A DNA stretch of 64,000 nucleotides from Bugula neritina (lineage: Eukaryota > Animalia > Bryozoa), in the NCBI GenBank assembly GCA_964035545.1, contig OZ037772.1, forward strand, positions 4,778,233-4,842,232, written 5' to 3'. The position numbers and the translations under genes were made by a program. The notes beneath the pieces were generated by a model, which saw nothing but the letters and a program-made list of their open reading frames with translations, made no database searches and was not told where the DNA came from. Of this stretch, positions 18,936-54,330 are shown one piece after another (position 1 is the first letter of the stretch; each line of letters opens with the position of its first letter).

Positions 18936-18997
18936 TAACAATAATAGGTAGACGATAGGTGATGCTGAACATGATGATGAAACTTTTGAATTACATA

Positions 18998-19650: not shown

Positions 19651-20350
19651 TAAGTTTTTCGAATACAGCATATCATGGAGTCTGCAGTAACAGACAGTGG
19701 CTATGTATAAATTCTGAAACATTATGTTATATTAAGTATATATTATATCATATCATATGTTACAATATAGCATTATTTTTAGGGTTGTCTTCTTTCTAGA
19801 TTGTTATATGAACAAAATTGAATAATTATGTACATAAAATTGTTTTTTTAACAGATAATGACTTTATAAAAAGAACCACTATTTATGTCTTTTATAAATA
19901 TACCCCTTACCAGAAGATTTAAAATAATAGAGATGAGTAGAATTACATCACCGCTATCTATTTTACAAGTCTATAACCAAGACAGACACGCTACTTACTG
20001 TAGACACACAGACAACTCACTGTATCATTGATACCTGGAAAAGTCCATTTACATTCTCTAATTGTAGGTCATCTAATACTGAAAACACATAAATAGTTAC
20101 AGAGATAGAGCATCTTCAACTGCTACAGATAAAAGTCAACATTCAATGAAGTGTAAAGAAACTGAAAATGAGTCAGTAATCGTCTACAGGTATTCCACCA
20201 TAACTATAGTTTATACAAGTTGGCGGTTTTGCTCTTTTTTATATACATCACTGCACATGTATAAAACTACTAAAACTCTACTACCATGCAACAAAACATA
20301 TTTTAGCCAAAAATTTTTATACTCCTCAACTATATCATATATAATTACAG

Positions 20351-20566
20351 ATACCTACAGTGTCTGGTTCAGACACTCTGGAGAAGATGTACTTGATTGG
20401 AAATAGTGTCTAAAAGACACAAGAGAATACACCATAGATGATATAAAGGTCACACAATCACCCACATGATAGTAGATGTAGCTCTACCAGATAATATTCA
20501 TTTACTGGCTCCAGAGTTGAGATACTTGAGAGTGAAAAATGTGGAATCTGACTCTAACCTGTCTGA
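20351..20566 (+). pseudogene. Candidate upstream (LRR N-cap-like) exon of the LRR-ROCO-caspase gene, disrupted in its 5' half
   Basis: Acceptor ttacag and strong phase-2 donor GA|gtaagt, compatible with the LRR exons. The 3' part encodes MIVDVALPDIIHLLAPELRYLRVKNVESDSNLS; no frame is open across the 5' part. Confidence 0.35.
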
Positions 20567-27600: not shown

Positions 27601-27722
27601 GACAGGATAGTTAAGGTCAACCTTTTAGTTCTAGCTGCTATGCTGATGATGCATTGTTATCATATAAGAAATCAGTCCCAGTAAAATGAATTTTTACCCA
27701 ATTGTGCTAGAATCAAAATCTA
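27601..27722 (+). mobile_element. MITE copy 4, left-end fragment
   Basis: gacaggatagttaaggtcaaccttttag... matches the first ~120 bp of the MITE and truncates the Gypsy element. Confidence 0.75.
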
Positions 27723-28069
27723 AACGTATTTGAATCTATTGAGAAGTTTTAAAATTAGATATAATTTGCAAATAAATATATGTTAACAAAGATATAAATC
27801 CATATAAATACCATGACATATTATAGTCAAGGAAAGCATAAAACATATTACAATATTTTAATATCTTCTGTTTGAAGTTAGTAAAAGTTAAAAAGTTAGA
27901 TTCATTAAAAAGCTTTTTTTGGGAAATATACAGGTAAAGCTTCAATATGTAATATCCTGCAGACTAAAATCAATTGTGTTGAGTTAGCAACATATAATAC
28001 AAAAAAATTGTTTTTTATATATATTTTGTATTATAAAATTTGTATTTTATAATTTATTGTCTGCTATAG

Positions 28070-28210
28070 CATGTCTGATCTGAAGAATCTGGAGACTCTT
28101 GATATGTCGGAGAATAACTTCAGTGAAGGATTACCTGATGTATTCACATCGATGACATCTCTAAGAGAAGTGAATATGGAGAACTGTGAGCTACCAACTC
28201 TACCTAAAAG
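28070..28210 (+). CDS. LRR exon 1 (141 nt, two LRRs)
   Basis: tatag|C ATG; MSDLKNLETLDMSENNFSEGLPDVFTSMTSLREVNMENCELPTLPK; weak donor gttttt. Confidence 0.75.
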
Positions 28211-31200
28211 GTTTTTAAAACCAACAATTATATGAAGTAGAAATAAACTGTTTTTATCTGGGATTTTGCATGGCTACATGTTTTTAGATTTATATTTTTT
28301 TAAGATAGATATTTTGTCAAAATTTCTCAAATCTGTTGCAAATTCTTGCAATATTATTACATAAATAAGCAAATAATTATACGCTAATGAAGAAATGTTA
28401 TGTATAAAATTATAACATGTGGTTAAATACAATATATTACATATGACAAACGGTACCATACTTTAGTTTCTAATGCTTGAAATGAGTAAATTAGGTAAAT
28501 AATAAGTTGACTTTATTCGCCTTTTCTTAAAAACGAAAAAGCGTAAGTTTCAAAATGTCATATCCTGCTGACTAAAGTAATTCTTTAATCTGGCAATATG
28601 ATGTATAATTGATATTTAAACAAGTCATACAGTAATAAAATTTGAAGTTTTAGAAACAATTATTTTGAAGTATTACATAAAAACGAATTATTTTCAAAAA
28701 TATAGTGGTAACAATAGAAAATATTGTTTTATATACTAATAAAATCTATATTTCATAACTGATATTCACCTTAAGATCTTGAAAAGAGAAACTCATGCAG
28801 TATATTTCACACACATATGTGATATTTATATGTAATAATGTATTTTATTCAAACTTCATTTTCCATTGGATGAAATTTTTATAATATCAATATACGACTT
28901 TATGCTAGAACTGCATTGCCTTTGCTTTAGATGGTCGTAATACTATAATTATAATGTTGCCTCAACTGGTATATGTTTACTATAGCATGTCTAATCTGAA
29001 GAATCTGGAGACTCTTAATATGTCAGGGAATAACTTCAATGAAGGATTACCTGATGTAGTCACATCGATGACATCTCTAAGAGATTGAATATTAGTTTCT
29101 GTGAACTACTAACTCTACCTGAAAGGTTAGTAAGAATGTATTAAATAAAATGTTCATTAGTGTGAAGGATATAATTCTGCATTAGATGTACCTATTTTTT
29201 TATTAAAGTTATCTACATATTCTGAAGTTGAGCTTGGAAAGTTCTAGAAGCATTTTGATTAGCTTTCTAGAGTTTCTAAGTGCAATATGTCGGGTTCACA
29301 GTAGAATCACAAGTACCAACTGTGTTAAACTTTTTCCACTGAGAGTTGACCACCGACTTTTCAGCTGACACCTTACCAACTACACTACAATAACTATTGG
29401 GTAATCTTAACATCTCATTCAACCAATTCTTCTGAACTCCACTGGCCCCTTTTCTACTCAATAACTATTAGGCTTCCCTGACTTCTCAACTCCCTTTGCA
29501 TCCAAACATACTACATGGCTGGCTATAGCAGTGTAAACAAACGCTGTACAGTTGTACAATATAACATCTCATATTCAATATAACATGCTTACTCGAACAT
29601 GTTTGATGTACATTTTTAGTAAACTCCCAGATGAATAATAATAATTTTTTATTCTCTTTACTTAATGAAAGTTTTCAGATTGTTATAACAATTCTTGATA
29701 CAGTTATAAAATCTGTGATCGTCCCCTCTTACCAGAATAATAGCTAATACAATCATTATAATAGCATATGTAACTTGAGATAGGAGTACGCTAATGTGTA
29801 TACAGGTCTAGTTCAACTCATCCTTCTGAGCCATCCCCCCCCCCTTATATATATGAGTAGAGTAGCTAGTCCTGAGTTCATTCAGGAAGCGCATTACATG
29901 ATATATAGATTTAGGCATAAAATAATTTGTAAACGAGCACGAAGAACAGTAAAAACATGCATGAGGGTCTGTCCAACATGTCCCCTGCCTACATACTTGT
30001 GACCCTCCAACGCATTACAGATAAACTTATTTTTAAACATAAATTTGAGTTATGAAGAGAGAAAAATCACCTTTTAGATGTTTTTTTATATAAATATAAT
30101 ATTACAAAACATGGAGCCTGCAATAATTATTGAAACTCCACTGTGTAATGATTCTTAAGAACGTAGAATAAAGTAATTTGAAATAATCGATAATGTGGCC
30201 CCTAGCCCAAGCTGAAGTTTAGAATATGTGGCTCCCACCATAAAATGCTCTGTTTCGAAAGCCCTCGCTACGAAAAGGTAGGAAACCCCCAGTCTAATAC
30301 ATGAGCTGCCTACTTGTATGACACAGCGGATGTGCACAGCCATAATCTACTACAATATTACTAAAGGAGTAAAAACTTATTTATGATTTGACTTTTTTAG
30401 CTGTTTCTTGAAAAATAAGAAGCTCAAGCTTCAATATGTCATATCCTGCAGACTAAAATCAGACTCTGATCCGGCAATATAAATTATAATGTATGATTCA
30501 TATTTAAATAAGTCATACAGTATTTTGTTATACTATAAGCTGTGATAAACTTTACAGATTTAGAAACAACTAATCTGCATTTTGAATTATAAAACAAAAA
30601 TGGATTATTTTCAAAAACTACCGGTAATGATAGAAAATATTGTCGTATATACTAATAAAATATAAAATTTATAACTTGTATTCAGCTTAATGTCTTGAAA
30701 TGAAGAACTCTGCAGTATATTTCACACACATATGTGATATTTATATCTAATAATGTCTTTTATTCCAACTTCATTTTTCATTAAATAAAATTTATATATC
30801 AATAAAAAACTTTACGCTATAATTACATTGCTGTAGCTTAAGATGGTTGTATTACTATGTGATGTCTCAACTGGTATATGTTTACTATAGCATGTCTAAT
30901 CTGAAGAATCTGGAGGTTCTTGATATGCCAGGGAATAACTTCAGTGAAGGATTACCTGATGTATTCATATCAATGACATCTCTAAGAGAGTTGCATATGC
31001 AGAACTGTGAACTACCAACTCCACCTGGGAGGTTAGTAAGAATGCATTAAATAAAGTGTTCATTTGTGTGAAGGGTATAGTTCTGCAATAGAAGTACCTA
31101 TTTTTTTATTAAAATTAGCTACATGTTTTAAAGTTCTACAGTTTTACAAACTTTCTGTATTTCATAAGTGAAATATATTAGGTTCACAATAGAATCAAAA

Positions 31201-34200
31201 GTACCAACTGTGTTACATACTTCCCATTGCAAGTCAACCACCGATTGCTAGCTGACGCTCTATAACCATTACATTACAAGGACTACTGGGTTATCCTGGC
31301 ACTCCATGCAACCAGTTCTTCTAAACTCTACTAGTCCCCTTACTACTTATTTAGTTTAGGCTTCCCGGGCCTTTCAACTCTCTTGCCATTCTACTAAAAT
31401 GCTATACTAAATGTGAAAAAGCTCCCTAACCATTACACATGGGTCGTTAGGTAATCTCAACACCACACTAAGCTGTTCACATGTGCATTCAGCTCCCTGC
31501 TACCATAAAGCTGTTCACGTGCACTAACCGTCATAATGTAAGAACTTCAATTACAGGAGGTTCTAATTTTACATGCCCCTCCTTTCAAATGGAAGGATAT
31601 CACAATTACTAGACATCAAATTTTTATAAGCGCATTACAGAGATTACTTGGTTAGCATGTGAATAAAATCTTAGTTGTATATATTATATGCTTCACTTGG
31701 TCTAATACATGAGCTGCCTACTTGTATGACACAGCAGATGTGCACAGCCAAAATCTACTACAAGATTACTAAATGATGTTTCAATTACTATATTATGTTT
31801 ACTATAGCATGTCTAATTTGGAGAATCTGGAGACTCTTGATATGTCACAGAATAACTTCAGTGAAGGACTACCTGATGTATTCACATCAATGACATCTCT
31901 AAAGACATTGTATATGAAGAACTGTGAACTAGAAATGCTACCTGAGAGGTTAGTGAAAGCAACTCAATATGAAATGCAAATAAACTATTTTATCTGTAGT
32001 ACACGACATCCAGGATTTGCCCGCATTTCTTTATATTTAAATTTTTTGCTGCTGAATAATTTCTGAAAATTCTTCAAACCTGTGAAATTATCTTTGCTAT
32101 ATTGTGTATAATATGCAAATAAATGCACGCCAATAAAAAGAATATATGTAGTATTATGACATATGATTCTGGAAAATATAAAAAATGTTACAATACTTTA
32201 ATTTCCTATATTCCTTAACGCTTGAATTAAGTAAAAGTTGATGAGTTAAGTTCAGTATATAGTTTTTTCTTGAAAAGATATACAGCTTTAGCTCTATTAT
32301 ATAATATACCTGCAGACTAAAACTAGCCATTGATCTGACAACATAATGGTAATTGATATCCAAATTATACAACTTTTTATTAAACACAATGAAAATTGTT
32401 AATTTGACAATCTTTAAATTTTAAAGTATAACAAAAACAAATTATTTTAGCAAATCACCTGTAATTATCGAAAAGAAATGATTTTAAATGTGAATAAAAT
32501 TTTAGTTGTACATCTGATGCTTTACTCAGTTTTAAAAAAAGCTCATGCTACAGTACATGTTTCACATGCATATGTAATATCTACTGTATATCTACTAATG
32601 TATTTTATTCTAACTTCATTTTCAATCAAATAAAATATGTATGTCAATCGGCAATTTTATGCTTGAATTACATTGCTTTAGCTTAAGATGGTTTTATTAC
32701 TATATGATGCTTCAACTGGTATATGTTTACTATAGCATGGCTAATCTGAAGAATCTAGAGACTCTTTATATGCCATATAATAACTTCAGTGAAGGATTAC
32801 CTGATGTAGTCACATCAATGACATCTCTAAGAGAAATGAATATTAGTTTCTGTCAACTACTAACTCTACCTGAAAGGTTAGTGAAAATGAATCAAATAAA
32901 ATATTTATTAGTGTGAAGGATATATAGTTCTGCAATAGAAGTACTTATTTTTTATTAAAATTTTCTACAGGTTTTAAAGTTCTACAGTTTTACAAACTTT
33001 CTGAATTTCTTAAGTGCAATATATTAGGTTCACAGTAGAATCACAAGTACCAACTGTGTTACATACTTCCCATTGGAAGTCAACTACCGGCTTGCCAGCT
33101 GATGCACTAACCATTATACTACAAGGGTAACCCTAACACTCCATGCAACCAGTTATTCTAAACTCTGCTGGTCCCCTTACTACTCATTCAGTTTAAGCTT
33201 CCCGGGCCTCTCAATTCTCTTGGCGTACTACTAAAATGCTATACTAAATGTGAAAGAGCTTGCTAACAATTACACATGGGTCGTTAGGTAATCTCAACAC
33301 CACACTAAGCTGTTCACATGTGCATTCAGCTCCCTGCTACCGTAAAGCTATTCACCTGCACTAACCATCATGATGTAAGAACTTCAATTACAGGAGGTTC
33401 TAATTTTACATGCCTCTCCTTTCAAATGGAAGGATATCACAATTACTAGACATCAAATTTTTATAAGCGCATTACAGAGATTACTTGATTAGCATGTGAA
33501 TAAAATCTTAGTTGTATATATTATATGCTTCACTTGGTCTAATACATGAGTTGCCTACTTGTATGACACAGCAGATGTGCACAGCCAAAATCTACTACAA
33601 CATTACTAAATGATGTTTCAATTACTATATTATGTTTACTATAGCATGTCTAATCTGGAGAATCTGGAGACTCTTGATATGTCACAGAATAACTTCAGTG
33701 AAGGATTACCTGATGTATTCACATCAATGACATCTCTAAGAGTGTTGTATATGGAGAACTGAAAACTAAAAACTCTACCTGAGAGGTTAGTGAAAGCAAC
33801 TCAATATGAAATACAAATAATATGATTTTATCTGTAGTACACGATACCCATTTCTTTATACTTAAATTTTTTGCTGTCAGGTAATTTCTGAAAATTTTTC
33901 AAACCAGTGAAATTATTCTTGCCATATTGTATATAATATGCAAATAAATACAAGCCAATAAAAAGATTCTATGTAGTATTATGACATATGGTTCTAGAAT
34001 ATATAAAAATGTCACAATATTTTAATCTCCTATATTCTTTAACGCTTGAATTAAGTGAAAGGTAATGAGTTATGTTCAGTATATAATTTTTTTTCAGAAG
34101 ATATACAGCTTAAGCTCTATTATATAATATACCTGCAGACTAAAACTAGCCATTGATCTGACAACATAACGTATAATCAATATTTAAATTATACAGTCTT

Positions 34201-37200
34201 TCATTAGATACAATAAAATTGTTAATTTGACAATCTTTAAATTTTAAAGTATAACGAAAACAATTTACTTTAGGAAATCACCTGTAACTATCGAAAAGAA
34301 ATTATTTTATATGTGAATAAAATTTCCGTTGTACATTTTACGCTTTACTCAGTTTTGAAAAAAATATCATGCCGCAGCACATGTTTCACATGCATATGTA
34401 ATATCTACTGTTTATCTACTAATGTATTTTATTCCGACTTCATTTTCCATCGAATATAATCTGTATGTCAATATCGGCAATTTTATGCTAGAATTACATT
34501 GCGTTAGCTCAAGATGGTTGTATTACTATATGATGCTTCAATTGCATGGTATTTTTTTACTATAGCATGTCTAATCTGAAGAATTTGGAGACTCTTCATA
34601 TGCCAGGGAATAACTTCAGTGAAGGATTACCTGATGTACTCACATCAATGACATCTCTAAGGACGATGTATATGCAGAGCTGTGAACTACCAACTCTACC
34701 TGAGAGGTTAGTGAGAATGCATCAAATAAAATGTTCATTAGTGTGAAGGTTATAATTCTGCCATAGAAGTACTTATTTTTTTTATTAAAATTATCTACAG
34801 TTTTTAAAGTTCTACAGTTTTACAAACTTTCTGCATTTCATAAGTGAAATATATTAGGTTCACAATAGAATCACAAGTATCAACTGTGTTACATACTTCC
34901 CATTGAAAGTCAACCACCGGCTTATGCCAGCTGACGCACTAACCATTACACTACAAGGATAACCCTAACACTCCATGCAACCAGTTATTCTAACTTCTGC
35001 TGGTCCCCTTACTACTCATTCAGTTTAGGTTTCCCGGGCCTCTCAACTCTCTTGGCGTACTACCAAAATGCTATACTAAATGTGAAAGAGCTTGCTAACA
35101 AATACACATGGGTCACTAGGTAATCTCAACAACCCACTAAGCTGTTCACATGTGCATTCAGCTCCGTGCTACCATAAAGCTATTCACGTGCACTAACCAT
35201 CATGATGTAATAACTTCAATTACAGGAGGTTCTAATTTTACATGCCCCCTCCTTTCAAATGGAAGGATATCACAATTACTAGACATCAAATTTTTATAAG
35301 CGCATTACAGAGATTACTTGATTAGCATGTGAATAAAATCTTAGTTGTATATATTATATGCTTCACTTGGTCTAATACATGAGCTGCACACTTGTATGAC
35401 ACAGCAGATGTGCACAGCCAAAATCTACTACAACATTACTAAATCATGTTTCAATTACTATAATTATTATGTTTACTATAGCATGTCTACTCTGGAAAAT
35501 CTGGAGACTCTTGATTTGTCACAGAATAACTTCAGTGAAGGATTACCTGATGTATTCACATCAATGACATCTCTAAGAGAGTTGCATATGAAGAATTGTA
35601 AACTAGAAATGCTACCTGAGAGGTTAGTGAAAGCAACTCAATATGAAATACAAATAAACTATTTTATCTGTAGTACACGACATCCAAGATTTGCCCGCAT
35701 TTTTCTATACTTAATTTTCTTGCTGCCAAATAATTTCTGAAAATCTTTCAAACCTGTAAAATTATTCTTGCTATATTGTAAATGGTATGCAAGTAAGTAG
35801 AAGCCAATACAAGGATTCTATGTAGTATTATGACATATGGTTCTAGAACATATAAAAATGTCACAATACTTTAATTTCCTATATTCCTCAACGCTTGAAT
35901 TAAGTAAAAGTTAATGAGTTAAGTTCAGTATATAATTTTTTTTAGAAGATATACAGCTTAAGCTCTATTATATAATTTACCTGCAGACTAAAGCTAGCCA
36001 TTGATCTGACAACATAACCTATAATTGATATCTAAATTATACAGCCTTCTATTATATACAATAAAAATTGTTAATTTGACAATCTTTAAATTTCAAAGTA
36101 TTACAAAAAGAAATTATTTTAGCAAATCACCGGTAATTATTGGAAAGAATTTCTTTTATATGTGGATAAAACTTTAGTTGTACATCTGATGCTTTACTTT
36201 GTTTTGAAAAAAGCTCATGCTGCAGTACATGTTTCACATGCATATGTAATATCTACTGTATATCTGCTAATGTATTTTATTCTAACTTCATTTTCAATCA
36301 AATAAAATCTGTATGTCAGTCGGCAATTTTATGCTAGAATTACATTGCTTTAGCTTAATATGCTTGTATTACGATATGATGTTTCAACTGGTATATGTTT
36401 ATTATAGCATGTCTAATCTGAAGAATTTGGAGACTCTTCATATGTCAGGGAATAAGTTCAGTGAAGGATTACCTGAGGTATTGACATCAATGACATCTCT
36501 AAGGACGTTGTATATGAAGAACTGTGAACTACCAACTCTACCTGAGAGGTTAGTGAGAATGCATTAAATAAAATGTTCATTAGCGTGAAGGATATAGTTT
36601 TGCAATAAAAGTATTTATTTTTTATTAGAATTATCTACATATTCACGTGCACTAACCGTCATGATGTAAGAACTTCAAATACAGCCCCTCCTTTCAAATG
36701 GAAGGACATCACAATTACTAGACATCAAATTTCTATAAGCGCATTACAGAGATTACTTGATTAGCATGTGAATAAAATCTTAGTTGTAGAATTACATTGC
36801 TTTAGCTTAATATGCTTGTATTACGATATGATGTTTCAATTACTATATATTGTTTACTATAGCATGTCAAATCTGGAGAATCTGGAGACTCTTCATATGT
36901 CAGGGAATAACTTCAGTGAAGGATTACCTGAGGTATTCACATCAATGAAATCTCTAAGAGAGTTGGATATGAAGAATTGTAAACTAGAAATGTTACCTGA
37001 GAGGTTAGTGAAAGCAAGTCAATGAGAAATACAAATAAAATGTTTTATCTGTAGTACACGACACCCAGGATTTGCCCGCATTTCTTTATACTCAATTTTT
37101 TTGCTGCCAAATAATTTCTGAAAATTTTTCAAACCTGTAAAATTATTCTTGCTATATTGTATATAATATGCAAATAAATACAAGCCAATAAAAATAATAT

Positions 37201-40200
37201 ATGTAGTATTATGACATATGGTTCTAGAATATATAAAAAATGTTACAATACTTTAATTTCCTATAACGCTTGAATTAAGTAAAAGTTGATGAGTTAGGTT
37301 TAGTATATAGTTTTTTTCTTGAAAAGATATACAGTTTAAGTTCTATTATATAATATACCTGCAGACTAAACCTAGCCATTGATCTGACAACATAACTTAT
37401 AATTGATTTTTAAATTATACAGTCTTTTATTAGATACAATAAAAATTGTTAATTTGACAATCTTTAAATTTGAAAGTATAACAAAAACAAATTATTTTAG
37501 CAAATCACCTGTGATTATCGAAAAGATATTATTTTATATGTGAATAAAATTTTAGTTGTACATCTGATGCTTTACTCTGTTTCGAAAAAAAAGGTCATGC
37601 TGCAGTACATGTTTCACATGCATATGTAACATCTACTGTTTATCTACTAATGTATTTTATTCCAACTTCATTTTCCATTGAATAAAATATGTATGTCAAT
37701 CGGCAATTTTATCTTAGAATTACATTGCTTTAGCTTAAAATGGTTGTATTACTATATGATGCTTCAACTGGTATATGTTTACTATAGCATGTCTGATCTG
37801 AAGAATCTGGAGACTCTTAAAATGTCAGAGAATAACTTCAGTGAAGGATTACCTGATGTATTCACATCAATGGCATCTCTAAGGAGGTTGTATATGCAGA
37901 TCTGTAAATTACCAACTCTACCTGAGGGGTTAGTGAGAATGCATTAGATAAAATGTTCATTAGTGTGAAGGATATAGTTCTTCAACAGAAGTCCTTTTTT
38001 TTATCAAAATTATCTGCAGTTTTTAAAGTTCTACAGTTTTTAAAGTTCTACAGTTTTACAAACCTTCTGCATTTCTTAAGTGCAATATATTAGGTTCACG
38101 GTAGAATCACAAGTACCAACTGTGTTACATACTTCCCATTGAAAGTCAACCACCGGCTTGCCAGCTGACGTTCTAGCCATTACACTACAAGTGTAATCCT
38201 AACACTCCATGCAACCAGTTATTCTAAACCCTGCTGGTTCCCTTACTACTCATTCAGTTTAGGCTTCCCGGGCCTCTCAACTCTCTTGGCGTACTACCAA
38301 AATGCTATACTAAATGTGAAAGAGCTTGCTAACAATTACACATGTGTCACTAGGTAATCTCAGCACTACACCAAGCTGTTCACATGTGCATTCATTTCCC
38401 TGCTATCATAGGATAGTTAAGGGCATCCTCACTAAGAATATCATAAATTTCTCTCAAAATGTAGTTTGGGTTCTTGAATAATATTGCTCTGCGGGTGGCA
38501 TGCGTGTTGCCTACTTGCAATTGTTTAGCCTAAGATCAAACTACAACCAGTAAGCAGCAACCTTCATTAGGACTGCGTCATTTATCAACATTACATTATG
38601 GGTGCTACATAAACAAAGTACAAAGCAAGCTATTCATTATAGCCTGCCAGCTAGCAAGCCTGTAATTAGCATGTATGCGCCAATATCTTCCCATCTCTAC
38701 GTGCTCATTGAAGCGTGAAGTGCTGCGCGCTGCTAGTTTCTTATGAGAAATATGGCATTTTCAGTGTATAAATCACCCATTTATGAGCAATCTAGCAGAG
38801 TTATTGAAAAAAAAATTGCACTGGAGAGATATCTCCGGATTCCAGCAGCGCAATTTTTATTCAGATATCATGTTTTGCTGCTGAGATATTTTACTGGTAC
38901 TGAAAAGTCAGCTTTTCTGGCAAAATTGGCCAAAATTGGGCAGTTTTTTGTCTATAACTTTGCAAAAAAAATGAAAATTGAAATTTTCCAAAAGGTTACA
39001 CTGGGGAAAAAGAAGATCTACAACATGGTTTTTAATTTTTGACTCTAGCATAATTAGGTGAGATTTTATTTTATTGGTACTGAATTCCTATATGATTACA
39101 ATGCATACCTCAGCAAGGCAGTTGCAGCTAAAAAGTTGCCCTTAACTATCCTGTGCAAGAATACATGGATGCTTCGAAAATTTAACCAATGGAACTTACT
39201 GGATTACATAATTATCAGGCAAAGGAATTTGAGTGAGGTTTTAGATACTTGAGCTGTAAGAAGAGCAGATTGTGGCACATATTATGTGATGCTAAAGTAA
39301 AAAATAAGGATTTAAAGAAAACACATTGCAAGAAAGACACAATTAAACTAAGCACTGTCATGCTGAAAGATCCAGAAAAAACAGAACAACTTAAAAAGAA
39401 ATTGAATAAGAATATAAAGTGTTGAGATGAAAATAATAATGAGATAGAGCAAATGTGGAAAATTTTGAGAACAGTGTTTTCAACTGATAGTGAAGTGGTT
39501 GAGAAGCAAGGCCGTAATAATCAGGATAGCTTAATGAGCATGATAAACTGCTACAACAGTTGATTGAGAAGAGAAACAAGGCAAGACAAGCTTTCTTCCA
39601 GTGTAATACCAGAGTGAAGAAAAGAGCTGCTTAAAAGCACAGAGCAGTCTTCAGAGGTATACCAGAGAAATGAAAAGTAACTGGTGGGAAGAAGAAGCAA
39701 TAGAACTCCAAATGACAGCAGACAGGAGGGACATGAAAGCATTATATTTAGGCTCAAAAGAAGCTTATGATCTGAAATCAAGAGTAATGATTCATCTCCG
39801 AGACCATAATGGACAAACAGTTTTACAAGAGAAGGGAAAAATATTAGAAAAATATCTGATCACTTCAATCAATTGCTTAACATACCAGGCGAGCTGGATA
39901 AAGCAGCAAAAAACATAGTGCAAAAGTCGCCTGTTGCATTTTTGGATGGTTCTCCCAATATGGATGAGCTCGTGTCAGCAAATAGCTCAACACAGGATGG
40001 AAAAGCTGTTGGCAGAAATGGTATTCTATCTTTGGTATGAAAGCATGGTGGTCAAAAAATGACAGGTGGTCTTTACAATACAGATTTTGTTGGACACCGA
40101 GACAGTACCACCAGACTGGACGGAAGCAAGCATTGTCCAATTTTTAAGAAAGGCGAAAGGAAAGTAAACAGGAATTATTGGGCATAATCTTGTATCTATT

Positions 40201-43200
40201 GTAGACAAGATTTCCTCTTGCATACTATCGGCTAAATGCATATACTACCCAAGAGGTGCTACTGGAGTCTCAGTGTGAATTCAGGAGTGGAAAGAAGCGC
40301 AAGTGTAAGAGAGGTGCAGAAAACATAATATGCTACTGTCCACAGCATTTTTTGACCCTAGTAAAGCATTTGATATTGTATATATTGCAAGCCTTTGGCA
40401 GGTTCTTAAAAGGTTTGACTGTACAGACAAGTTTATTTACATCAAGGAAGCTCTTCATACAGGCATGCAAGCAAATGTGGCAGTGGGCAGTTCCATCTCA
40501 AATAATTTTGCAGTAACAAATGGAGTCAAACAAAGGTGTTTCCTTGCACTAACACTTTTCTCACTCTACCGGTCAGCAATGCTTGAGGTTGCGTTCAAAG
40601 ACAGCTCCGAAGGAGTATCATAAAAACTAGAAAAGAGGCAGATCTTGTTGACGTTGCTCATGTCAAGTCAAAATTTAAAACCACTACTGAGTGAGTAAAA
40701 GATTTGCTATTTGCTAGTGATAGTACTTTAGTTGCTCTTCATTCTTATGCTATACAGACTCCAGTCAACAGATTTGCCAATGCTGCAAAATATTATAATC
40801 TCAAAATTATCATCAAGAAGACAGAATGCCTCTACCAGCTTGCAAATTTTGAAAATGCAGGTGTACCGTGCTACGTTACTCGCTGCCTTACTGTATGGTG
40901 TTGAGACTTAGAACATACACAGTGTGCTAGTAGACAGACTGCAAGCGTATGTCATGCAATATCTATGCTCAATCATGGGTGTCTTTTAGAAGGACAAGAT
41001 TACTAACCAAGAAGTATTAAAGAGAGCTAGCTTAGCATCTCTAAAATCTATCCTTATTCAAATGAACTTGAGATAGCTAGGACATCTCGAGACGACAGAT
41101 CATGGCCATTTATGTTAACAAATTCTCTATTCGCAGCTGAAAAAAAGTACACAAAGCCAAGGAAGGCCAAGATTTAGATTTAAAGACACTGTAAAGCGAA
41201 ATATAAAAAAGTTGGACATGTACAGAGATAGCTGGCAAAGGAAGGGTTAATGTAGATATGGATGGAGACGTTTGATCAAACTAAATTGAAAAGAGTCATT
41301 GTCGCACCGACAGACTGCTCTGATGACGACAGTGATGGTGATGATGATAATGATGATGATAATGAAGATGATGATAATGATGATATTGATTCTCATTATT
41401 ACTTTTGTTGTTATTTTAAGATCATAAAAAAATAGATATTTAATTTGTTTTAAAAAACAGTTAGGTTTGATGTATCATATTATATTTCATGATATTTTGC
41501 TGTATTTAGTTTGCTTCCAAGCGATGCTGAAAAATTTCTACAGTAAAACAGTTGCATAGAGTTGAGGTTTTTTAAATGACGTGTTTAAGAAAAATTCCCC
41601 GTGATGAGTTTGCAGACATCTTTGCAAATGCGTTATCGTCTGAAATAGGTGAAATATATTTTTTTAAAGATCTTCAAAAGCTATATTCAGAAGCGACTTG
41701 TTTGTTAGAATCTGACTTATTATATATCATATTTTATCTGAATTACAGTTTGCAGTATTTGGAGAATCTGGAAGTTCTGAACATTGGGCACAACAACATG
41801 ACTATAATTCCAGAGGCTGTCTGCAACTTGAAAAAATTATACAGACTAGAAGTTTCTGGATGCAAAGCTCTAACCACTCCCCCTTATGAAGTCTGTACAC
41901 AAGGATTATCAGCTATCAGACAATACTACAAAGATCTGGCAAAAGGTAAAGGTGAAAGTCTTCCCCTAGTCACCATTGCCGTGATTGGTCACACAATGGC
42001 AGGGAAAACGAGTCTCATCAGAACATTGCAGAGTGAAGAGCGAAAGCGAGTGCTGACAAATCGTGGACCTGAGTTTGAAGTTGACGAAACAACTAAAGTC
42101 TTTAAAGTTGAAGAGTTAAAAGTAAATAACACAGTTCTGAGACTAATAGACCTGGGAGGACAGCCAGTGTATCACATGACATACCAGCTAACACTTAAAC
42201 AAAACTGCATGCCGATAGTAGTGGTGAACATGGAGCACTATGATCTGCTGGCAAAGGAGAAAGGAGACAGAGAGGCTGTGAGAAGACTGGCTTTTGATTG
42301 GCTGGCTCATTTATATGTGGCAAATCCTGGAATTAGACAACCGAAACTGGTTTTTACTCACAAAGACAAGTTTGAAGAGGAGAATTTCACAAAGCTGACT
42401 TCTAATTTCACCAACACAGCTGATCTACTAAAAGATGAAATCATCAGAGAAGAGAAACAACTAGACCAAAGCATAGCAGAGATAGAACATTTCCATCAAC
42501 ACAAAGAGCTGTTCCTGCGTAAGGATATCTACTCAGTTGGGAAAGAAGATACTTATCAAATTTTTGAGAATATGAAATCTGCCATCTTTAATTCAGCTCA
42601 AAAATTTGTAAAAGTGTTGCCAAAACTATGGGAAGATGTGAATGAGAAGATTTTAGGATTGCAGACAGCATTCAGTACATTTGATGAAATACTTCATGCA
42701 GTGCAGCAAGTAGGTAGAGGTATCACACCTGATCAACTCACCACGATCCTCACCTACATGCATGATTGTGGTAAGATCTTGTGGTACAAAGATATCAAGG
42801 AGTTGAACTTGATTATTTTTCACAAAATTGCGAAAGTTACTGAGCTACTCAAAGTCTTGTTTCAGCATGATGAAAATGTGTGGCAGATTCGGCAAACAAG
42901 TTTCAAACCACAGCTTCTGACTAACGGAGCTTTTCTTGAGGAAGAACAGTTTGAGAAATTTGTAGGAGATTTCTTGTCAGCAGGAATCATGGAGAGCCAA
43001 CTTCTAGAACATTTAATCAAAGCTGAGACAGCATTCTTTGATGAAAATGCATACCTACTTGCTGTCACTTTGCTGCAGAAATTCAGCATTCTCTACGGAC
43101 CAGCTGATCTGGAATCAAGGAGCTGCTTCATTGTTCCCTTCTACTCTCCTGATTACTTAGAGAACAATCTTACTACTGATGAAGACATCATTCTCCATGC

Positions 43201-46200
43201 TGAGATCATGTTCAAAGGTTTCTCAATTCCACAATATGTCTACCAGCAGATGAGTGTTGTTGTCCTACAAATGTTCCCGGATGAAACAAGTGTTTCCCTT
43301 GTTAGAAAAAACGGAGTAAAGGTTTTCCACGATGACATCTCAGTGCGCCTTGTCCATGATGGTCTCTCAAGAAAGGCAGATGTAACAGTGTCTGGAGCAA
43401 CAGAGAAAATCACAGATTGTTGGAAACACATGGTCAGCATAACCAGGCAAATATCCAAGGAGATTCGGCGTTCATGGCCTGCCAGCAGAATGGTACACAA
43501 GTCTAGTTGTACACACTGCATTCTGAAAGATGACTCCAGTCCTGAGTTTCAGGTTACTCCCAGCTGGTGTCTTGACTTTCAAACTGAGAAGCCATATCAA
43601 CAGTTTCAGAGGAAGACGGTGACAGTTTTCTGTAGAGGGGAGAAGATTTTGAGCCCACTTGTTCACCCCTGTAAGTCAGTAATAAGTAGTTTTGTAATGT
43701 TTCAATTGCAATACTAGTTACCTGTTACCAACACTGAGAACATGTCTGCTGTTGCTATTTCAGGCACCCCTTTGACAAGCCAAGATACTCAACGACTTAA
43801 AAACACCATTGCAGAACTGAGAGAAAAAAAACAAGGGAAAAGCTTCAAAACTGGCAAGTCACCATTGTTATTTAACATCTAGTAAATTCTTTCCTCATTT
43901 AGTATGTTGATGTATAACAAATATATATATGTCAAGTTTGTTGTTGTTGCAATACCAAAAACATTTTAAAACAAAAAAAACTAGGGCAAGGTGACCGATG
44001 CAAAAGTTATTGCAGGAAAAAATACTAGAAATCTAAGTGTCTGCATTTATACATTTTTATTCTATCAGCATATTATTTTAATAAAACAATATGATTATAT
44101 TCACAATATAGAAACTGTCAAATCACATCAGCAAACCACAACCACCTCTGTGGAAGATGAGCTGAGTGATCTCTCTGATGATGATGAATATATTCTACCT
44201 CCACCATCTGCTGTTGACAAAATAAAACATCTTAAGCAAGTCCCTGTCTTTACAACTAAACAAAGTATAAAAGAGCTCTTTTCAAACACTGAGAAGGTAA
44301 TGTAACAGCTTTACGTACAACTCTATGGAAAGCCTTCAGCATTGCTCAAAAATACATGTATAGTAGTAATTTAAAAATATTTGTACTATTTTTATTTCAC
44401 AATTATAAAAAAAAGTGTGTTATTAGTATTAACTTCCTAGCGTGCCTGTGTTATGCTCTAAGGGTATGTATGAACCTTATGTATTCCAATTAGGTGTTTG
44501 GTATGACAATGCCAAGAGGAACCGCTTTGATAATCAACAATGAAAAGATAACCAATAGCTCAGACAGACCAGGTTCTCAAGTTGATGTTCAAAATCTGAG
44601 TGACATGCTACGATCCTTTCAGTTCAATATTGAGATGAAAACAGATCTCACAGCTGAGGTGGCAGTTATGACCAATTTTGTTGTTTCTTTTAATTAATTT
44701 TAAGCTATATAATCACAAGTGTTGTTATAAAGCAAATTTGACTCAGATATAATATAAGAGCTGAGTTTAAATCTTTTGATTTCTAATAATTTATAAGTTA
44801 AAAGTTACAATTGTGCTTCTCATTTGCTTTTATATACTGTTAACCGTCTGAATTGTTTTACAAAAGCTCACAACTTTTACACAAATATACTCATTATTTC
44901 CAATTTTTTTAAACAAACAGGAATTATACCAAACGGTTAAAGCAGAAATTAACAACAGCAGAAATGCTGACCACGGAATGTTCTTTCTGTTCATTGGTTC
45001 TCATGGAGTTGAGAATCATGTGTATGGATCAGATGGAGAGTTGGTAAAACTGACAGACCTGTATGACCTGCTATCTGTTCCTCAGAATCCAGTGGTTGCT
45101 GATAAGCCTAAACTGGTTGTCATCCAAGCTTGCAGCATTGGTGAGTATTCTATAACCTGCATCTTACTATAAGCCAATGTATTACAGCATCAAAAGTACC
45201 TCTACCAATCAAATACAATATATGAATCATTTAGATCTACCTAAATCTAAAAAAACAGAACACCCTGGTGCTGAGACTGCTACACCTTCAGTTTCTGTTG
45301 CTAGTACCAGAGACAGAAGTCTGCTGGAGAGACGTCATGGTGAAAATTTATATGTTATGAAAGCTAGCTTTCCGTGTGAGTAAAAAATTCTCTTTTTTGG
45401 ATTAGTGTGTTCTCTGTAGATATTTGCTTTTACATCTAAACATAAAATTGTTCTGTATGTGCTAACTTTTTCACAAATAACCAAAATATTGCATTCCAGT
45501 TTATGTCAGTTAGTAGAGCAATATCCACGTTATTGACTATAGCTCTTCAAGTACTAAAAGTTCAGCTTTGTTGTATGTTATATAGCTTATAGTGCCTGGA
45601 GATTTTCTGACTGTGGATCTCTATTCATCAGATGCTTTGTCAGAACCATGTACCGACATGCCTGTCATAGAGACATGCATGAGATCTACAAAATTGTGAG
45701 TGTGCTACATTCCATCTGATATAATATAGTAACATATAGCTTCTTTCAAAACTTGTTAATGTATTCTGTGTCTCATCTCTTTTGTTTTCATAACGTGAAA
45801 GACCATAGTAATTAAGTGAAAATAACTCAGAACAAAATAGAAACACTTATTATGTTGACTTTCTCATGCTGAATTTATTTCTAAATTATGTTTCAACTTA
45901 CATTTAAGTCTAAGCAATTTTTTTGTGGTGACATGTTGCATTATTTTTATGTAGGTACAAAATCGGGTTAGAAAATTTTGTACGGAGAAAAGACTTCCTC
46001 TTGGACAACTACCAGTTGCTATAGACACTCTGACACACCATAGAAAACTCTACCTGTTTCCAGGATATGATGGAAGTTCTGGTCGAGAGAAGGAGCTGAG
46101 TTTACTTCAACTCAGGAAGAGATGCCAACATCCTCCATCCAAGCCGCTTCTGTCCAGTCTAGCTGCACAGTCCACACTGTCAGAGTCAGCTAGCACTTCA

Positions 46201-46305
46201 CAGCAGGCAGAGAGTGGGCAAGGCAGCAAATCAAATAACCAGAAGAGAAAATTAGACTTCAGCAAGGATAGCATCCAAATTATAAAACACAAAAAAATTG
46301 AGTGA
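28070..46305 (+). CDS. LRR-ROC-COR-caspase fusion gene (ROCO protein with C-terminal caspase); 5' end unresolved
   Basis: Eleven phase 2-2 LRR exons are frame-compatible with exon 41749-43670 (LRR-ROC-COR), followed by 43764-43853, 44112-44296, 44494-44658, 44921-45140, 45235-45375, 45586-45695 and 45955-46305. All phases match, giving ~1060 uninterrupted codons after the array. Confidence 0.8.
28986..29125 (+). pseudogene. LRR exon 2, frameshifted (140 nt)
   Basis: 1-nt deletion (agagattgaat versus agagaaatgaat in exon 5) produces an immediate TGA; splice sites are intact. Confidence 0.85.
30891..31031 (+). CDS. LRR exon 3
   Basis: MSNLKNLEVLDMPGNNFSEGLPDVFISMTSLRELHMQNCELPTPPG; ag/gt boundaries, phase 2-2. 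Confidence 0.85.
31808..31948 (+). CDS. LRR exon 4
   Basis: MSNLENLETLDMSQNNFSEGLPDVFTSMTSLKTLYMKNCELEMLPE; phase 2-2. Confidence 0.85.
32736..32876 (+). CDS. LRR exon 5
   Basis: MANLKNLETLYMPYNNFSEGLPDVVTSMTSLREMNISFCQLLTLPE; phase 2-2. Confidence 0.85.
33645..33785 (+). pseudogene. LRR exon 6, in-frame stop
   Basis: ...SLRVLYMEN*KLKTLPE; the conserved Cys codon TGT is TGA at 33760-33762; splice sites are intact. Confidence 0.85.
34566..34706 (+). CDS. LRR exon 7
   Basis: MSNLKNLETLHMPGNNFSEGLPDVLTSMTSLRTMYMQSCELPTLPE; phase 2-2. Confidence 0.85.
35482..35622 (+). CDS. LRR exon 8
   Basis: MSTLENLETLDLSQNNFSEGLPDVFTSMTSLRELHMKNCKLEMLPE; phase 2-2. Confidence 0.85.
36408..36548 (+). CDS. 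LRR exon 9
   Basis: MSNLKNLETLHMSGNKFSEGLPEVLTSMTSLRTLYMKNCELPTLPE; phase 2-2. Confidence 0.85.
36863..37003 (+). CDS. LRR exon 10
   Basis: MSNLENLETLHMSGNNFSEGLPEVFTSMKSLRELDMKNCKLEMLPE; phase 2-2. Confidence 0.85.
37788..37928 (+). CDS. LRR exon 11
   Basis: MSDLKNLETLKMSENNFSEGLPDVFTSMASLRRLYMQICKLPTLPE; phase 2-2. Confidence 0.85.
38407..39155 (-). mobile_element. MITE copy 5 (inverted relative to copies 1, 3 and 6)
   Basis: cataggatagttaagggcatcc ... gttgcccttaactatcctgtg; no matching TSD, and the two flanks are unrelated sequences. Confidence 0.9.
39156..41390 (+). mobile_element. Degenerate, 5'-truncated RTE (BovB-like) LINE in the intron before the ROC exon
   Basis: NWWEEEAIELQMTAD, LLESQCEFRSG, FFDPSKAFD, GVKQRCFLALTLFSL, LFASD, GRPRFRFKDTVK, and a (gatgataat)n tail at ~41322-41390. 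Confidence 0.85.
41749..43670 (+). CDS. LRR-ROC(GTPase)-COR exon
   Basis: Terminal LRRs plus the PPxEVxxxG cap (TPPYEVCTQG), P-loop VIGHTMAGKTSL, G3 DLGGQ, G4 THKD, COR-A motif YMHDCGKILWY. Acceptor ttacag is phase 2 and donor gtaagt is phase 1. Confidence 0.92.
43764..44296 (+). CDS. Two linker exons (43764-43853, 44112-44296) joining COR to caspase
   Basis: TPLTSQDTQRLKNTIAELREKKQGKSFKT-ETVKSHQQTTTTSVEDELSDLSDDDEYILPPPSAVDKIKHLKQVPVFTTKQSIKELFSNTEK; joining them requires a GC donor (G|gcaagt). Confidence 0.7.
44494..46305 (+). CDS. Caspase (peptidase C14) p20/p10 domain exons plus C-terminal extension
   Basis: PRGTALIINN, RPGSQVD, DLTAE, FIGSHG (catalytic His), YGSDG, KPKLVVIQAC (catalytic Cys), SYSAWR....GSLFI, QLP...TL..KLYLFP. 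Stop at 46303-46305 overlaps aataaa. Confidence 0.93.
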
Positions 46306-48584: not shown

Positions 48585-48772
48585 CCTGTGAGAAGCCTTT
48601 GATGAAAAAGGTTTTTTCATTAAGGCAAACTAAATATTTATTCAAATGAGGCACAAGAGCAATTATAATTGGATGCTCTTCCTAACATCACATATGGTCT
48701 TTGTCGACGCTTGAACCCATGACCTCTTGTTTATTAAATAAACAATCAAACGCATAGACCATTGCTGCTCTC
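48585..48772 (-). mobile_element. tRNA-derived SINE copy
   Basis: Reverse complement (gcagcaatggtctatgcg...gggttcaagc...cttctcac) is similar to 7308-7490. Confidence 0.6.
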
Positions 48773-49350
48773 TATAGTAATAAGACATAGATTTCACAAA
48801 AATTTAAAAAGGAAATAAAACATGTTTATACCAATTTGTGCTACTTGCTTCTTTGATTTGTGAAAAATAATTATTATCATATCAAAGTTATAACAGTCAA
48901 ACAGGTAAAAACAATATTTACCCACGTGCTTCATTGATGAAGCTTATTAAGATATGATTAGTAAAAATGGTATTGATCTAGCATCAGTTTATACCCAAAT
49001 ACTGTTGCAAAAGTATCAGATAAATAAACCCCTTGTATTTGTATAACATATTCCAAAGTATATATAAATGTTGGCTAATTTTCCAAATAGAAATACTAAC
49101 CAATGCAATATGTTTTTTAATATTGTGCTCAGATTTCCAATAAGCCATTAAAGTTCCTAAAAATTAAATAAGTTTATTATATTATATTATTCAATAAACC
49201 TGCATGGATGTCCATTTCATTTTCCTACTTACCGTGAGTTGCCTTCCTTATGTTACTTTGATATAAATACAAAAGCACTGACATATGCGTGTATAAAAGC
49301 ATGTCCACAAGCACAAAGAGGCACACACCGAGATACACCTGTAAACAAAG

Positions 49351-49412
49351 ACACACACACTCACACTCACACACACACACACACTCACACGCACACTCAC
49401 ACGCGCCTACAC
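49351..49412. repeat. Imperfect (CA)n microsatellite
   Basis: Directly visible. Confidence 0.9.
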
Positions 49413-54031: not shown

Positions 54032-54032
54032 C

Positions 54033-54330
<298 letters not shown>

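What the first reader, a model, noticed from the sequence alone, without database searches (positions are those of the whole stretch)
28070..46305. LRR-ROC-COR-caspase fusion: a candidate single-chain sensor, GTPase switch and death protease
Seen: phase-compatible exons join an LRR array, an intact ROC GTPase (GHTMAGKT, DLGGQ, THKD), COR, a ~90-aa linker and a caspase with a His/Cys dyad. There is no stop after COR, and no CARD, DED or death domain or separate start exon is evident before the caspase. Established: ROCO proteins (LRRK1/2, DAPK1, MFHAS1) dimerise through ROC-COR in a nucleotide-dependent way, and initiator caspases are activated by induced dimerisation. The characterised animal ROCOs I know carry kinase or death-fold modules, not a caspase. 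Inference: ligand binding by the LRRs drives ROC-COR dimerisation and activates the fused caspase directly, making an adaptor-free NLR/inflammasome analogue.
Basis: partly seen in the sequence, partly recalled or inferred. Interest (0 to 1): 0.93.

Follow-up and report, generated by a model that had tools for sequence, protein, structure and literature searches.

The report
Bryozoan LRR-ROCO GTPase fused to caspase
This animal gene joins a leucine-rich-repeat sensor, a Roc-COR GTPase switch and a complete caspase in one protein; it is one of at least 66 such genes in this genome, so it looks like a large, undescribed family of single-chain cell-death receptors in bryozoans.

Summary
Window 28070-46305 (+) carries eleven 141-nt LRR cassette exons (nine intact). 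Then come one 1.9-kb exon for LRR-Roc-COR, two short linker exons and five caspase exons. From the Roc-COR exon to the stop at 46305 the frame is open.

The fusion is supported by:
- a conserved splice donor at the end of COR;
- RNA contigs that cross 43670>43764 and five later junctions;
- a same-strand caspase exon downstream of 66 of 69 paralogous Roc-COR exons in this genome;
- one colinear alignment to Watersipora subatra RefSeq proteins (LRR-COR-caspase, 1413-1419 aa) and to a Bugula neritina model.

The junction 43853>44112 was not seen in RNA, and its donor here is GC.

The AlphaFold model of the Roc-COR exon matches LRRK1, C. tepidum Roco and LRRK2. The catalytic His and Cys are kept in all 23 paralogous p20 exons that I read.

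This copy is damaged at its 5' end. Exon 2 has a 13-nt deletion and a stop, and a tentative exon 1 has lost its donor. It may therefore be truncated or decaying.

The sensor-switch-protease mechanism is inferred. It gains support from brachiopod relatives that carry a CARD where bryozoans carry the caspase.

The architecture is not wholly new. Bacterial LRR-Roc-COR-caspase proteins and one annelid caspase with a ROC pro-domain have been noted in print. The bryozoan expansion has not.

The parts
19675..19693 (+). Tentative exon 1 (ATGGAGTCTGCAGTAACAG). In paralogues it is followed by a GTAGGT donor; here a 5-nt deletion has removed that donor.
   Evidence: Alignment with L045, L046 and L049; sequence read. 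Rests on only 3-4 sequences, so it is tentative.
20351..20566 (+). Exon 2. Five paralogues keep one frame through ..YSVWFRHSGEDPPDD..KGHTITHMIVDG.LPDNIHLLAPEL.HLRVKNV.S.SNLS up to a GTAAGT donor. The window copy has a 13-nt deletion and a TAG at 20404-20406. An in-frame ATG at 20466 remains.
28070..37928 (+). Array of eleven 141-nt LRR cassette exons, two LRRs each, all in the same phase. Starts: 28070, 28986 (dead), 30891, 31808, 32736, 33645 (in-frame stop), 34566, 35482, 36408, 36863, 37788.
38700..41000 (+). Reverse-transcriptase (LINE-like) fragments inside the 3.8-kb intron between the last cassette and the Roc-COR exon. Not part of the protein.
   Evidence: ORFs; weak Pfam RVT_1 (E 7e-4) at 40330-40620
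41749..43670 (+). Single exon for the last two LRRs, the Roc GTPase (P-loop 41987-42010, DLGGQ 42149-42163, THKD 42356-42367), COR-A and COR-B. It ends in phase 1 at T|GTAAGT.
   Evidence: Pfam; AlphaFold pLDDT 87, pTM 0.85; Foldseek to LRRK1, CtRoco and LRRK2; donor conserved in L001-L006; RNA joint 43670>43764
43764..43853 (+). Linker mini-exon, 30 codons, phase 1 at both ends. The donor is GCAAGT here and GTGAGC in the closest paralogue, L002.
44112..44296 (+). Acidic linker exon (..VEDELSDLSDDDEY..VPVFTTKQSIKELFSNTEK), with no Pfam domain and no Met. It is conserved in Bugula P0036.
   Evidence: RNA joint 44296>44494 in four runs
44494..44658 (+). Caspase exon 1: start of p20, with the SDRPG arginine at 44560-44574.
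   Evidence: Pfam Peptidase_C14 40 bits; RNA joints on both sides
44921..45140 (+). Caspase exon 2: catalytic His in GSHG (44996-45007) and catalytic Cys in QACS (45125-45136).
   Evidence: Pfam 35.9 bits; caspase-2 and CED-3 are the best solved matches; dyad kept in 23 of 23 paralogues
45235..45375 (+). Caspase exon 3: linker between the p20 and p10 subunits.
   Evidence: RNA joints 45140>45235 (four runs) and 45375>45586 (four runs, with two or more mismatches at the joint); borders corrected
45586..45695 (+). Caspase exon 4: p10 motifs SYSAWR and GSLFI.
45955..46305 (+). Caspase exon 5: the end of p10 (..GQLPVAIDTL..KLYLFPGY), a Ser/Gln-rich tail and the stop TGA at 46303-46305.
   Evidence: RNA joint 45695>45955; translation

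Best explanation
Window 19.7-46.3 kb (+) is one multi-exon animal gene. It belongs to a large bryozoan family whose product is a single chain, in this order: a short N-terminal peptide, about 18-22 LRRs built from 141-nt cassette exons, a Roc GTPase, COR-A and COR-B, an acidic linker of about 90 residues that looks disordered, and a complete caspase (p20 and p10) with its catalytic residues.

Shown here: the domain content, the reading frame, most splice junctions, the family size, and conservation of the layout in three bryozoan genera.

Inferred mechanism: the LRRs hold the Roc-COR module closed. Binding of a ligand, or a change of nucleotide state, alters Roc-COR self-association, as in other ROCO proteins. 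That brings two caspase domains together. Proximity activates the caspase, which resembles CARD-type initiator caspases. The caspase may then cut itself free at aspartates in the acidic linker. The outcome would be cell death or proteolytic signalling in cell-autonomous defence or allorecognition.

In effect the caspase sits where brachiopod relatives carry a CARD, so the adaptor step is skipped.

This particular copy has an intact Roc-COR-caspase part (1060 codons). Its 5' exons are damaged and two cassettes are dead. It would have to start at the ATG at 20466, or from another promoter, or it is on the way to becoming a pseudogene.
For: Architecture:
- Pfam finds LRR, Roc, COR-A and Peptidase_C14.
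- The AlphaFold model of the Roc-COR exon (pLDDT 87) matches LRRK1 8e05 (E 4e-23), CtRoco 6hlu and LRRK2 over about 600-700 columns.
- The spliced model is open from 20466 to 46305, 1517 aa.

One transcript:
- An RNA contig crosses 43670>43764. Joints 44296>44494, 44658>44921, 45140>45235, 45375>45586 and 45695>45955 are seen in up to four runs from three studies.
- The COR-end donor T|GTAAGT is conserved in six paralogues.
- The linker exons contain no Met.

Family:
- At least 69 intact Roc-COR exons.
- 66 of them have a same-strand caspase p20 exon within 8 kb downstream.
- His and Cys are kept in 23 of 23 p20 exons.

Other species:
- One BLASTP alignment covers model residues 1-979 against Watersipora XP_067947674.1 residues 394-1416 (E 1e-159).
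- XP_067948342.1 and Bugula EB796_002463 align in the same colinear way.

Mechanism:
- Lingula XP_013393996.1 is LRR-Roc-COR-CARD.
- The best solved relatives of the caspase are caspase-2 and CED-3.
- Bacterial LRR-Roc-COR proteins carry caspase and other effectors at the same position (PMC8195603).
Against: - No RNA contig crosses 43853>44112, and that donor is GC in this copy. Skipping the mini-exon would keep the frame.
- Most RNA contigs are only 90-95% like the window, so they come from paralogues or another strain. Expression of this exact copy is not shown.
- Exon 2 has a frameshift and a stop, the tentative exon 1 has no donor, and two cassettes are dead.
- The pentapeptide is QACSI, not QACxG, and the Gln varies (Q, H or E) among paralogues. 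Asp specificity is therefore uncertain.
- Dimerisation, ligand binding, GTPase activity and protease activity are all untested. The COR homodimer prediction gave no answer.
Confidence: 0.55

Rival explanations
1. There are two neighbouring genes. A ROCO gene ends just after COR by read-through to the stop at 43715-43717, and a separate caspase gene downstream has its own promoter. The apparent fusion comes from phase-compatible exons lying next to each other.
For: A stop follows 15 codons after the donor if the intron is retained. In-frame ATGs lie at the start of the first caspase exon (GMTM). The 43853>44112 joint was not seen. Bugula EB796_015160 was predicted without LRR or Roc.
Against: An RNA contig joins 43670 to 43764. 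The phase-1 donor is conserved in six paralogues. The layout is kept at 66 of 69 loci that have diverged to about 45% identity. RefSeq and GenBank models in two other genera are colinear through the linker. EB796_015160 itself aligns from COR-B onwards (model residues 414-860), so it is a truncated fusion model and not a free caspase.
Confidence: 0.04
2. The family is real, but this copy is a decaying or already dead member. Its 5' coding exons are broken, so no full-length protein is made from it.
For: Five paralogues keep exon 2 open, whereas this copy has a 13-nt deletion and a TAG in it. The tentative exon 1 donor is lost. Two of eleven cassettes are disabled. One donor is GC. A LINE fragment sits in an intron. 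Few RNA contigs are 99% or more like the window.
Against: 1060 codons across eight exons are open, with all catalytic motifs and splice sites intact. That is unlikely for an old pseudogene. A conserved in-frame Met at 20466 could serve as the start. Dead cassettes can be skipped without changing the frame.
Confidence: 0.3
3. The family is not an immune or allorecognition receptor set. It serves developmental or physiological cell death, for example the cyclic regression of bryozoan polypides, or general stress signalling.
For: Bryozoan zooids go through programmed degeneration (general knowledge). Brown-algal ROCO genes respond to many stresses (PMC11378527). Nothing here links the gene to pathogens.
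Against: The family has at least 66 clustered paralogues, with tandem cassette LRR exons that are gained, lost and disabled. That pattern is typical of recognition families, not of housekeeping death machinery.
Confidence: 0.2

Closest known systems
MFHAS1/MASL1 (animal LRR-Roc-COR ROCO protein)
   Same: N-terminal LRRs followed by Roc and COR. It is the nearest cluster by predicted structure for the Bugula relative (TM 0.63 over residues 8-699). RefSeq names the Watersipora family members 'MFHAS1 homolog'.
   Different: MFHAS1 has no enzyme after COR. Here a complete caspase follows. MFHAS1 is a single gene in vertebrates, whereas this genome has at least 69 copies. Orthology was not tested.
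Lingula anatina LRR-Roc-COR-CARD proteins (XP_013393996.1) and Trichoplax ROCOs with CARD or death domains
   Same: The same LRR-Roc-COR scaffold, with a cell-death module attached at the C-terminus of COR (Trichoplax as cited in PMC11378527).
   Different: Those proteins carry an adaptor domain that would recruit a caspase. The bryozoan proteins carry the caspase itself, and no CARD.
Bacterial LRR-AP-GTPase(Roc)-COR conflict proteins with C-terminal caspase, TIR, trypsin or GT4 effectors (Kaur et al. 2021, PMC8195603)
   Same: The same order of modules, with a caspase-type peptidase among the effectors. They are multicopy and are predicted to act in defence.
   Different: They are prokaryotic, have no introns and carry bacterial caspase-like domains. 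Here the peptidase is an animal caspase closest to caspase-2 and CED-3, in a gene with at least 19 exons. The fusion therefore most likely arose independently in animals.
Owenia fusiformis caspase with a ROC pro-domain (caspase-Y clade; PMC11463336)
   Same: A lophotrochozoan caspase whose pro-domain region holds a ROC domain. It is the only mention I found in print of an animal ROC-caspase.
   Different: It is a single gene, noted in passing. No LRR or COR was described, no expansion was reported, and bryozoans were not sampled.
NLR inflammasomes and the Apaf-1 apoptosome
   Same: The logic is the same: a repeat sensor, a nucleotide switch, and activation of an initiator caspase by proximity.
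   Different: The switch here is a Ras-like Roc GTPase with COR, not a STAND ATPase. There is no NACHT or NB-ARC domain, and the caspase is linked covalently instead of being recruited through CARD or PYD.
Brown-algal LRR-ROCO genes (PMC11378527)
   Same: An expanded LRR-Roc-COR family in which the LRRs are encoded by separate, shuffled exons. They have been proposed as immune receptors.
   Different: They have no effector after COR. Ectocarpus has 37 genes, against at least 69 here. Each algal exon encodes one LRR, and here each cassette encodes two.

Membership tests
ROCO proteins | Roc (Ras-of-complex) GTPase domain with G1, G3 and G4 motifs | tested here: met
   Pfam Roc scores 27.9 bits (cut-off 27) and matches 25 of 25 family members. 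GHTMAGKT, DLGGQ and THKD are present and invariant in alignment A1.
ROCO proteins | COR domain directly after Roc | tested here: met
   Pfam COR-A is below its cut-off in this protein (20.4 against 35.3) but matches 18 of 25 relatives. The AlphaFold model aligns to LRRK1, CtRoco Roc-COR and LRRK2, and to the COR-only structure 3dpt (TM 0.62-0.65).
ROCO proteins | GTP binding and hydrolysis, and nucleotide-dependent dimerisation through COR | tested here: inconclusive
The COR homodimer prediction returned 'no answer'.
Caspases (peptidase family C14A) | Peptidase_C14 fold with p20 and p10 parts | tested here: met
   Pfam scores are 40 and 35.9 bits for single exons. The full domain (1-230 of 233) is found in the colinear Watersipora relatives. 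Caspase-2, CED-3 and caspases 3, 6, 7 and 8 are the solved matches.
Caspases (peptidase family C14A) | Catalytic His (SHG) and Cys (QACxG) | tested here: met
   GSHG is at 44996-45007 and QACS at 45125-45136. Both are kept in 23 of 23 paralogues. The fifth residue is Ile, not Gly.
Caspases (peptidase family C14A) | P1-Asp pocket (two Arg and one Gln) | tested here: inconclusive
   The Arg in SDRPG, the Gln of QAC and the Arg in SAWR lie at the expected motif positions. I assigned them from knowledge of caspase motifs, not from a structural alignment. The Gln is H or E in other paralogues.
Caspases (peptidase family C14A) | Proteolytic activity and activation by dimerisation | not testable with these tools
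   Needs expression and an enzyme assay.
NLR / STAND receptors | NACHT or NB-ARC ATPase domain | tested here: not met
   No NACHT or NB-ARC domain in the window protein. Two of 25 relatives give weak NACHT hits (E 2e-4) of P-loop level only. It is an analogue of NLRs, not a member.
CARD/DED/death-fold initiator caspases | Death-fold pro-domain before p20 | tested here: not met
   No Pfam domain in the linker ORF 43991-44302. The linker is acidic and of low complexity.

The most novel reading that the evidence does not exclude
Bryozoans have built a major intracellular recognition system from single-chain LRR-Roc-COR-caspase receptors, with at least 66 genes in this genome. A Ras-like GTPase takes the place of the STAND ATPase of NLRs, and the death protease is wired in directly. 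The repertoire is diversified by shuffling, skipping and decay of phase-symmetric LRR cassette exons. This would be an independent invention of the sensor, nucleotide-switch and caspase logic of inflammasomes. It could underlie pathogen defence or the acceptance and rejection of neighbouring colonies.
Probability: 0.35. Interest if true: 0.9.

Novelty: new variant of a known kind. Interest (0 to 1): 0.72.

Why it matters
ROCO proteins such as LRRK2, DAPK1 and MFHAS1 are medically important, yet how their Roc-COR switch drives an output is still debated. A natural family in which the output is a caspase gives a simple readout, cleavage or cell death, for Roc-COR switching.

For the evolution of immunity, it would show that the receptor-switch-caspase logic can be built on a small GTPase without any adaptor. 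The brachiopod LRR-Roc-COR-CARD proteins would be the likely intermediate.

The size of the family exceeds the ROCO numbers reported for brown algae, which were described as the largest to date (PMC11378527). That makes bryozoans a good place to study how such receptors diversify.

Tried and rejected
- Complex prediction on two copies of COR (residues 290-640 of the Roc-COR exon) scored 0.00 with the verdict 'no answer'. It counts neither for nor against dimerisation.
The caspase p10 exons and 5' regions of L002 and L003 could therefore not be compared.
- Comparing window 1-28069 with 46306-64000 to find shared 5' exons found only a 760-bp repeat.
- The search for homologous proteins with the linker-caspase part of P0036 found only the two Bugula proteins, a limit of its word index. 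The exhaustive search was needed to find the Watersipora proteins.
- The ESM Atlas listed no large cluster with both Roc and caspase.
- My first model of caspase exons 3 and 4 (45373/45593) was in frame but lacked three residues. I replaced it with 45375/45586 after comparing paralogues and RNA contigs.
- I considered that the linker might be a degenerate CARD and rejected it. It has no Pfam hit and is acidic and of low complexity.
- I considered horizontal transfer of a bacterial ROCO-caspase and judged it unlikely. The caspase is of the animal type and the gene is rich in introns.
- Four literature searches found no paper on an animal LRR-Roc-COR-caspase family. Of two further searches, the second found the single Owenia mention.
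Full report
**What is in the sequence**

The window is AT-rich animal DNA with about 30% G+C. It lies at G000:C8:4778233-4842232 in a 216-Mb genome. Between 28070 and 37928 on the + strand there are eleven 141-nt exons. Each encodes two LRRs of the form SMSNLKNLETLDMSxNNFSEGLPDVFTSMTSLRxLxMxNCxLxxLPE. All have the same phase and ..tatag acceptors, and ten have GT donors. Nine are intact. The cassette at 28986 has stops and no GT donor, and the one at 33645 has an in-frame stop. This agrees with earlier scan notes s1-444272 and s1-444459.

A 3.8-kb intron follows, holding reverse-transcriptase fragments. Then one exon, 41749-43670, encodes two more LRRs, a Roc GTPase and COR. The motifs are GHTMAGKT at 41987-42010, DLGGQ at 42149-42163 and THKD at 42356-42367.

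Two linker exons come next, 43764-43853 and 44112-44296, followed by five caspase exons: 44494-44658, 44921-45140, 45235-45375, 45586-45695 and 45955-46305. Together with the Roc-COR exon they form one open frame of 1060 codons that ends at TGA 46303-46305.

The caspase has GSHG at 44996-45007 and QACS at 45125-45136. It also has the SDRPG, SYSAWR and GSLFI motifs expected of a caspase. Single exons score 40 and 35.9 bits on Pfam Peptidase_C14, against a cut-off of 21.4. The best solved relatives are caspase-2 and CED-3.

**Is Roc-COR real?**

Pfam Roc just passes its cut-off (27.9 against 27). COR-A and COR-B are weak in this protein. Across 25 relatives, Roc matches all 25 and COR-A matches 18.

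An AlphaFold model of the exon, built on that alignment, has pLDDT 87 and pTM 0.85. Its best Foldseek matches are LRRK1 (8e05, E 4e-23), the C. tepidum LRR-Roc-COR crystal structure (6hlu), LRRK2, and the isolated COR domain 3dpt. The G1, G3 and G4 residues are invariant in the family.

**Is it one gene?**

Five lines of evidence say yes.

1. The exon after COR ends in phase 1 at T|GTAAGT. That donor is kept at the same position in six paralogues whose introns have diverged.
2. Contigs from public RNA-type runs were laid on 41500-46400. One contig (run X1, 339 nt) crosses 43670>43764. Others show 44296>44494 (four runs, three studies), 44658>44921, 45140>45235 (four runs), 45375>45586 (four runs) and 45695>45955.
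3. The genome holds at least 69 intact single-exon Roc-COR reading frames, from 267 first-look candidates, and at least 129 caspase p20 exons. I compared the two coordinate lists by eye and added. By that count, 66 of the 69 Roc-COR exons have a same-strand p20 exon within 8 kb downstream. The exceptions are C1:34570672, C6:2607458 and C6:3792310. The paralogues have diverged to about 45% protein identity, so the adjacency has been kept for a long time.
4. The spliced model aligns as a single BLASTP segment, residues 1-979, to Watersipora subatra RefSeq XP_067947674.1 at residues 394-1416 (33% identity, E 1e-159). It aligns in the same way to XP_067948342.1 and to Bugula neritina EB796_002463. 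The Watersipora proteins are 1413-1419 aa. Pfam finds LRRs and a full Peptidase_C14 domain in both, and COR-A in XP_067948342.1.
5. The linker exons contain no Met.

**What is missing**

No contig crossed 43853>44112. In this copy that donor is GCAAGT, whereas the closest paralogue has GTGAGC at the same place. The mini-exon is in phase 1 at both ends, so skipping it keeps the frame.

Most contigs are only 90-95% like the window. They therefore come from paralogues or a diverged strain, and transcription of this exact copy is not shown.

One X4 contig joins the 43853 donor back to the 41749 acceptor. That could be a circular RNA, a tandem relative or an assembly chimera. I could not tell which.

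**The 5' end**

The cassette at 28070 has an acceptor, so the gene starts further upstream. A DNA search of the genome found conserved blocks about 21 kb upstream of the Roc exon in this gene, and at similar distances in paralogues.

In five paralogues the block at 20351-20566 is an exon with one open frame, up to a GTAAGT donor in the phase the cassettes need. It encodes ..YSVWFRHSGEDPPDD..KGHTITHMIVDG.LPDNIHLLAPEL.HLRVKNV.S.SNLS. The window copy has a 13-nt deletion and a TAG at 20404-20406, and only the frame from ATG 20466 onward remains open.

A tentative first exon, ATGGAGTCTGCAGTAACAG at 19675-19693, is followed by GTAGGT in paralogues. Here it has lost that donor.

From ATG 20466, and skipping the two dead cassettes, the model is 1517 aa. 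No death-fold, TIR or membrane domain appears at the N-terminus of the family. This copy may be N-terminally truncated or decaying.

**How it probably works (inference)**

ROCO proteins self-associate through COR in a way that depends on the bound nucleotide. Initiator caspases are activated when two monomers are brought together. Both are established knowledge. Putting them on one chain suggests that a change in the LRR-Roc-COR module controls pairing of the caspase domains.

Three results here make this more than a guess:

- The nearest non-bryozoan relatives include Lingula anatina XP_013393996.1, which is LRR-Roc-COR-A-COR-B-CARD, and a second protein, HEPN-LRR-Roc-COR-CARD. A caspase-recruiting domain therefore sits exactly where bryozoans have the caspase.
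- The caspase is closest to CARD-type initiators.
- The catalytic His and Cys are kept in all 23 paralogous p20 exons I read, which argues for selection on catalysis.

The acidic linker (VEDELSDLSDDDEY) offers aspartates where the active caspase could be released. That is speculation.

The residue before the catalytic Ala-Cys or Val-Cys varies among subfamilies (Q, H or E), so substrate preference may differ between them. The family size, its genomic clustering and the cassette LRR exons resemble recognition families. Whether the targets are pathogens, foreign colonies or internal signals is open. The one complex prediction gave no answer.

**What is already known**

- Kaur et al. 2021 (PMC8195603) list caspase among at least 24 effector domains found after LRR-AP-GTPase-COR in bacteria.
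- A 2024 survey of lophotrochozoan apoptosis genes (PMC11463336) notes, in passing, one Owenia fusiformis caspase with a ROC pro-domain. It did not sample bryozoans.
- Trichoplax ROCOs with CARD or death domains, and brown-algal LRR-ROCO genes with exon-shuffled LRRs, are described or cited in PMC11378527. Aplysia ROCO-TIR and ROCO-death proteins are described in PMC9334734.
- Family members sit in RefSeq and GenBank as 'MFHAS1 homolog', 'uncharacterized protein' or 'Caspase family p20 domain-containing'.
- I found no paper that describes an animal LRR-Roc-COR-caspase family or its expansion. The library does not hold most subscription journals.

**Verdict**

The mechanism is plausible but untested. 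The thing is a new variant of a known kind, a ROCO protein with an animal caspase as its output. It is notable mainly for being conserved across cheilostome bryozoans and for having at least 66 copies here. This particular copy has 5' damage.

Noticed in passing
window 43853 > 41749 (run X4): One RNA-type contig joins the mini-exon donor back to the acceptor of the Roc-COR exon, 2.1 kb upstream and out of frame. It could be a circular RNA of these two exons, a tandem relative or an assembly chimera.
   Followed up: partly
window 17062-17818, 23591-24338, 58054-58811 (+), 18984-19646 (inverted), 27602-27724 (partial): A repeat of about 760 bp (72-88% identity between copies) occurs several times in the window. 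The G+C-rich stretch at 22-27.7 kb (46-49% G+C, few ORFs) looks like two 4-kb tandem units that end in this repeat. Related copies are scattered over many chromosomes.
   Followed up: partly
window 12804-14482 (-): ORFs of 333 aa and 112 aa that look like fragments of a non-LTR retrotransposon reverse transcriptase, judged by eye only. They are separate from the reverse-transcriptase fragments at 38.7-41 kb.
   Followed up: no
window 55637-56599 (-): An intact 320-aa ORF with the look of a seven-transmembrane receptor. It lies between this gene and the next ROCO-caspase paralogue.
   Followed up: no
G000:C8:4884196-4886115 and C8:5039151-5041070 (L003, L002): The two closest paralogues (84% and 89% protein identity in Roc-COR) lie 64 kb and 219 kb downstream on the same strand of the same chromosome. 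Larger clusters sit at C1 33.8-35.5 Mb and C6 2.6-6.3 Mb.
   Followed up: partly
G000:C7:5.07-5.11 Mb and 7.58-7.71 Mb; C9:9.32-9.41 Mb; C2:30.51-30.55 Mb: Further tandem clusters of caspase p20 exons, some in 175-aa open frames. They are not next to any of the 69 scored Roc-COR exons. They may be other caspase families, or ROCO-caspases that were not scored.
   Followed up: no
P0169 (UPI000695F1B6, 1675 aa): A relative with the layout HEPN_DZIP3 - LRR - Roc - COR-A - COR-B - CARD - integrase zinc-binding domain. This is another unusual ROCO architecture outside bryozoans.
   Followed up: no
window 61876-62160 (+): A long TA-rich microsatellite that reads as (IY)n in one frame.
   Followed up: no
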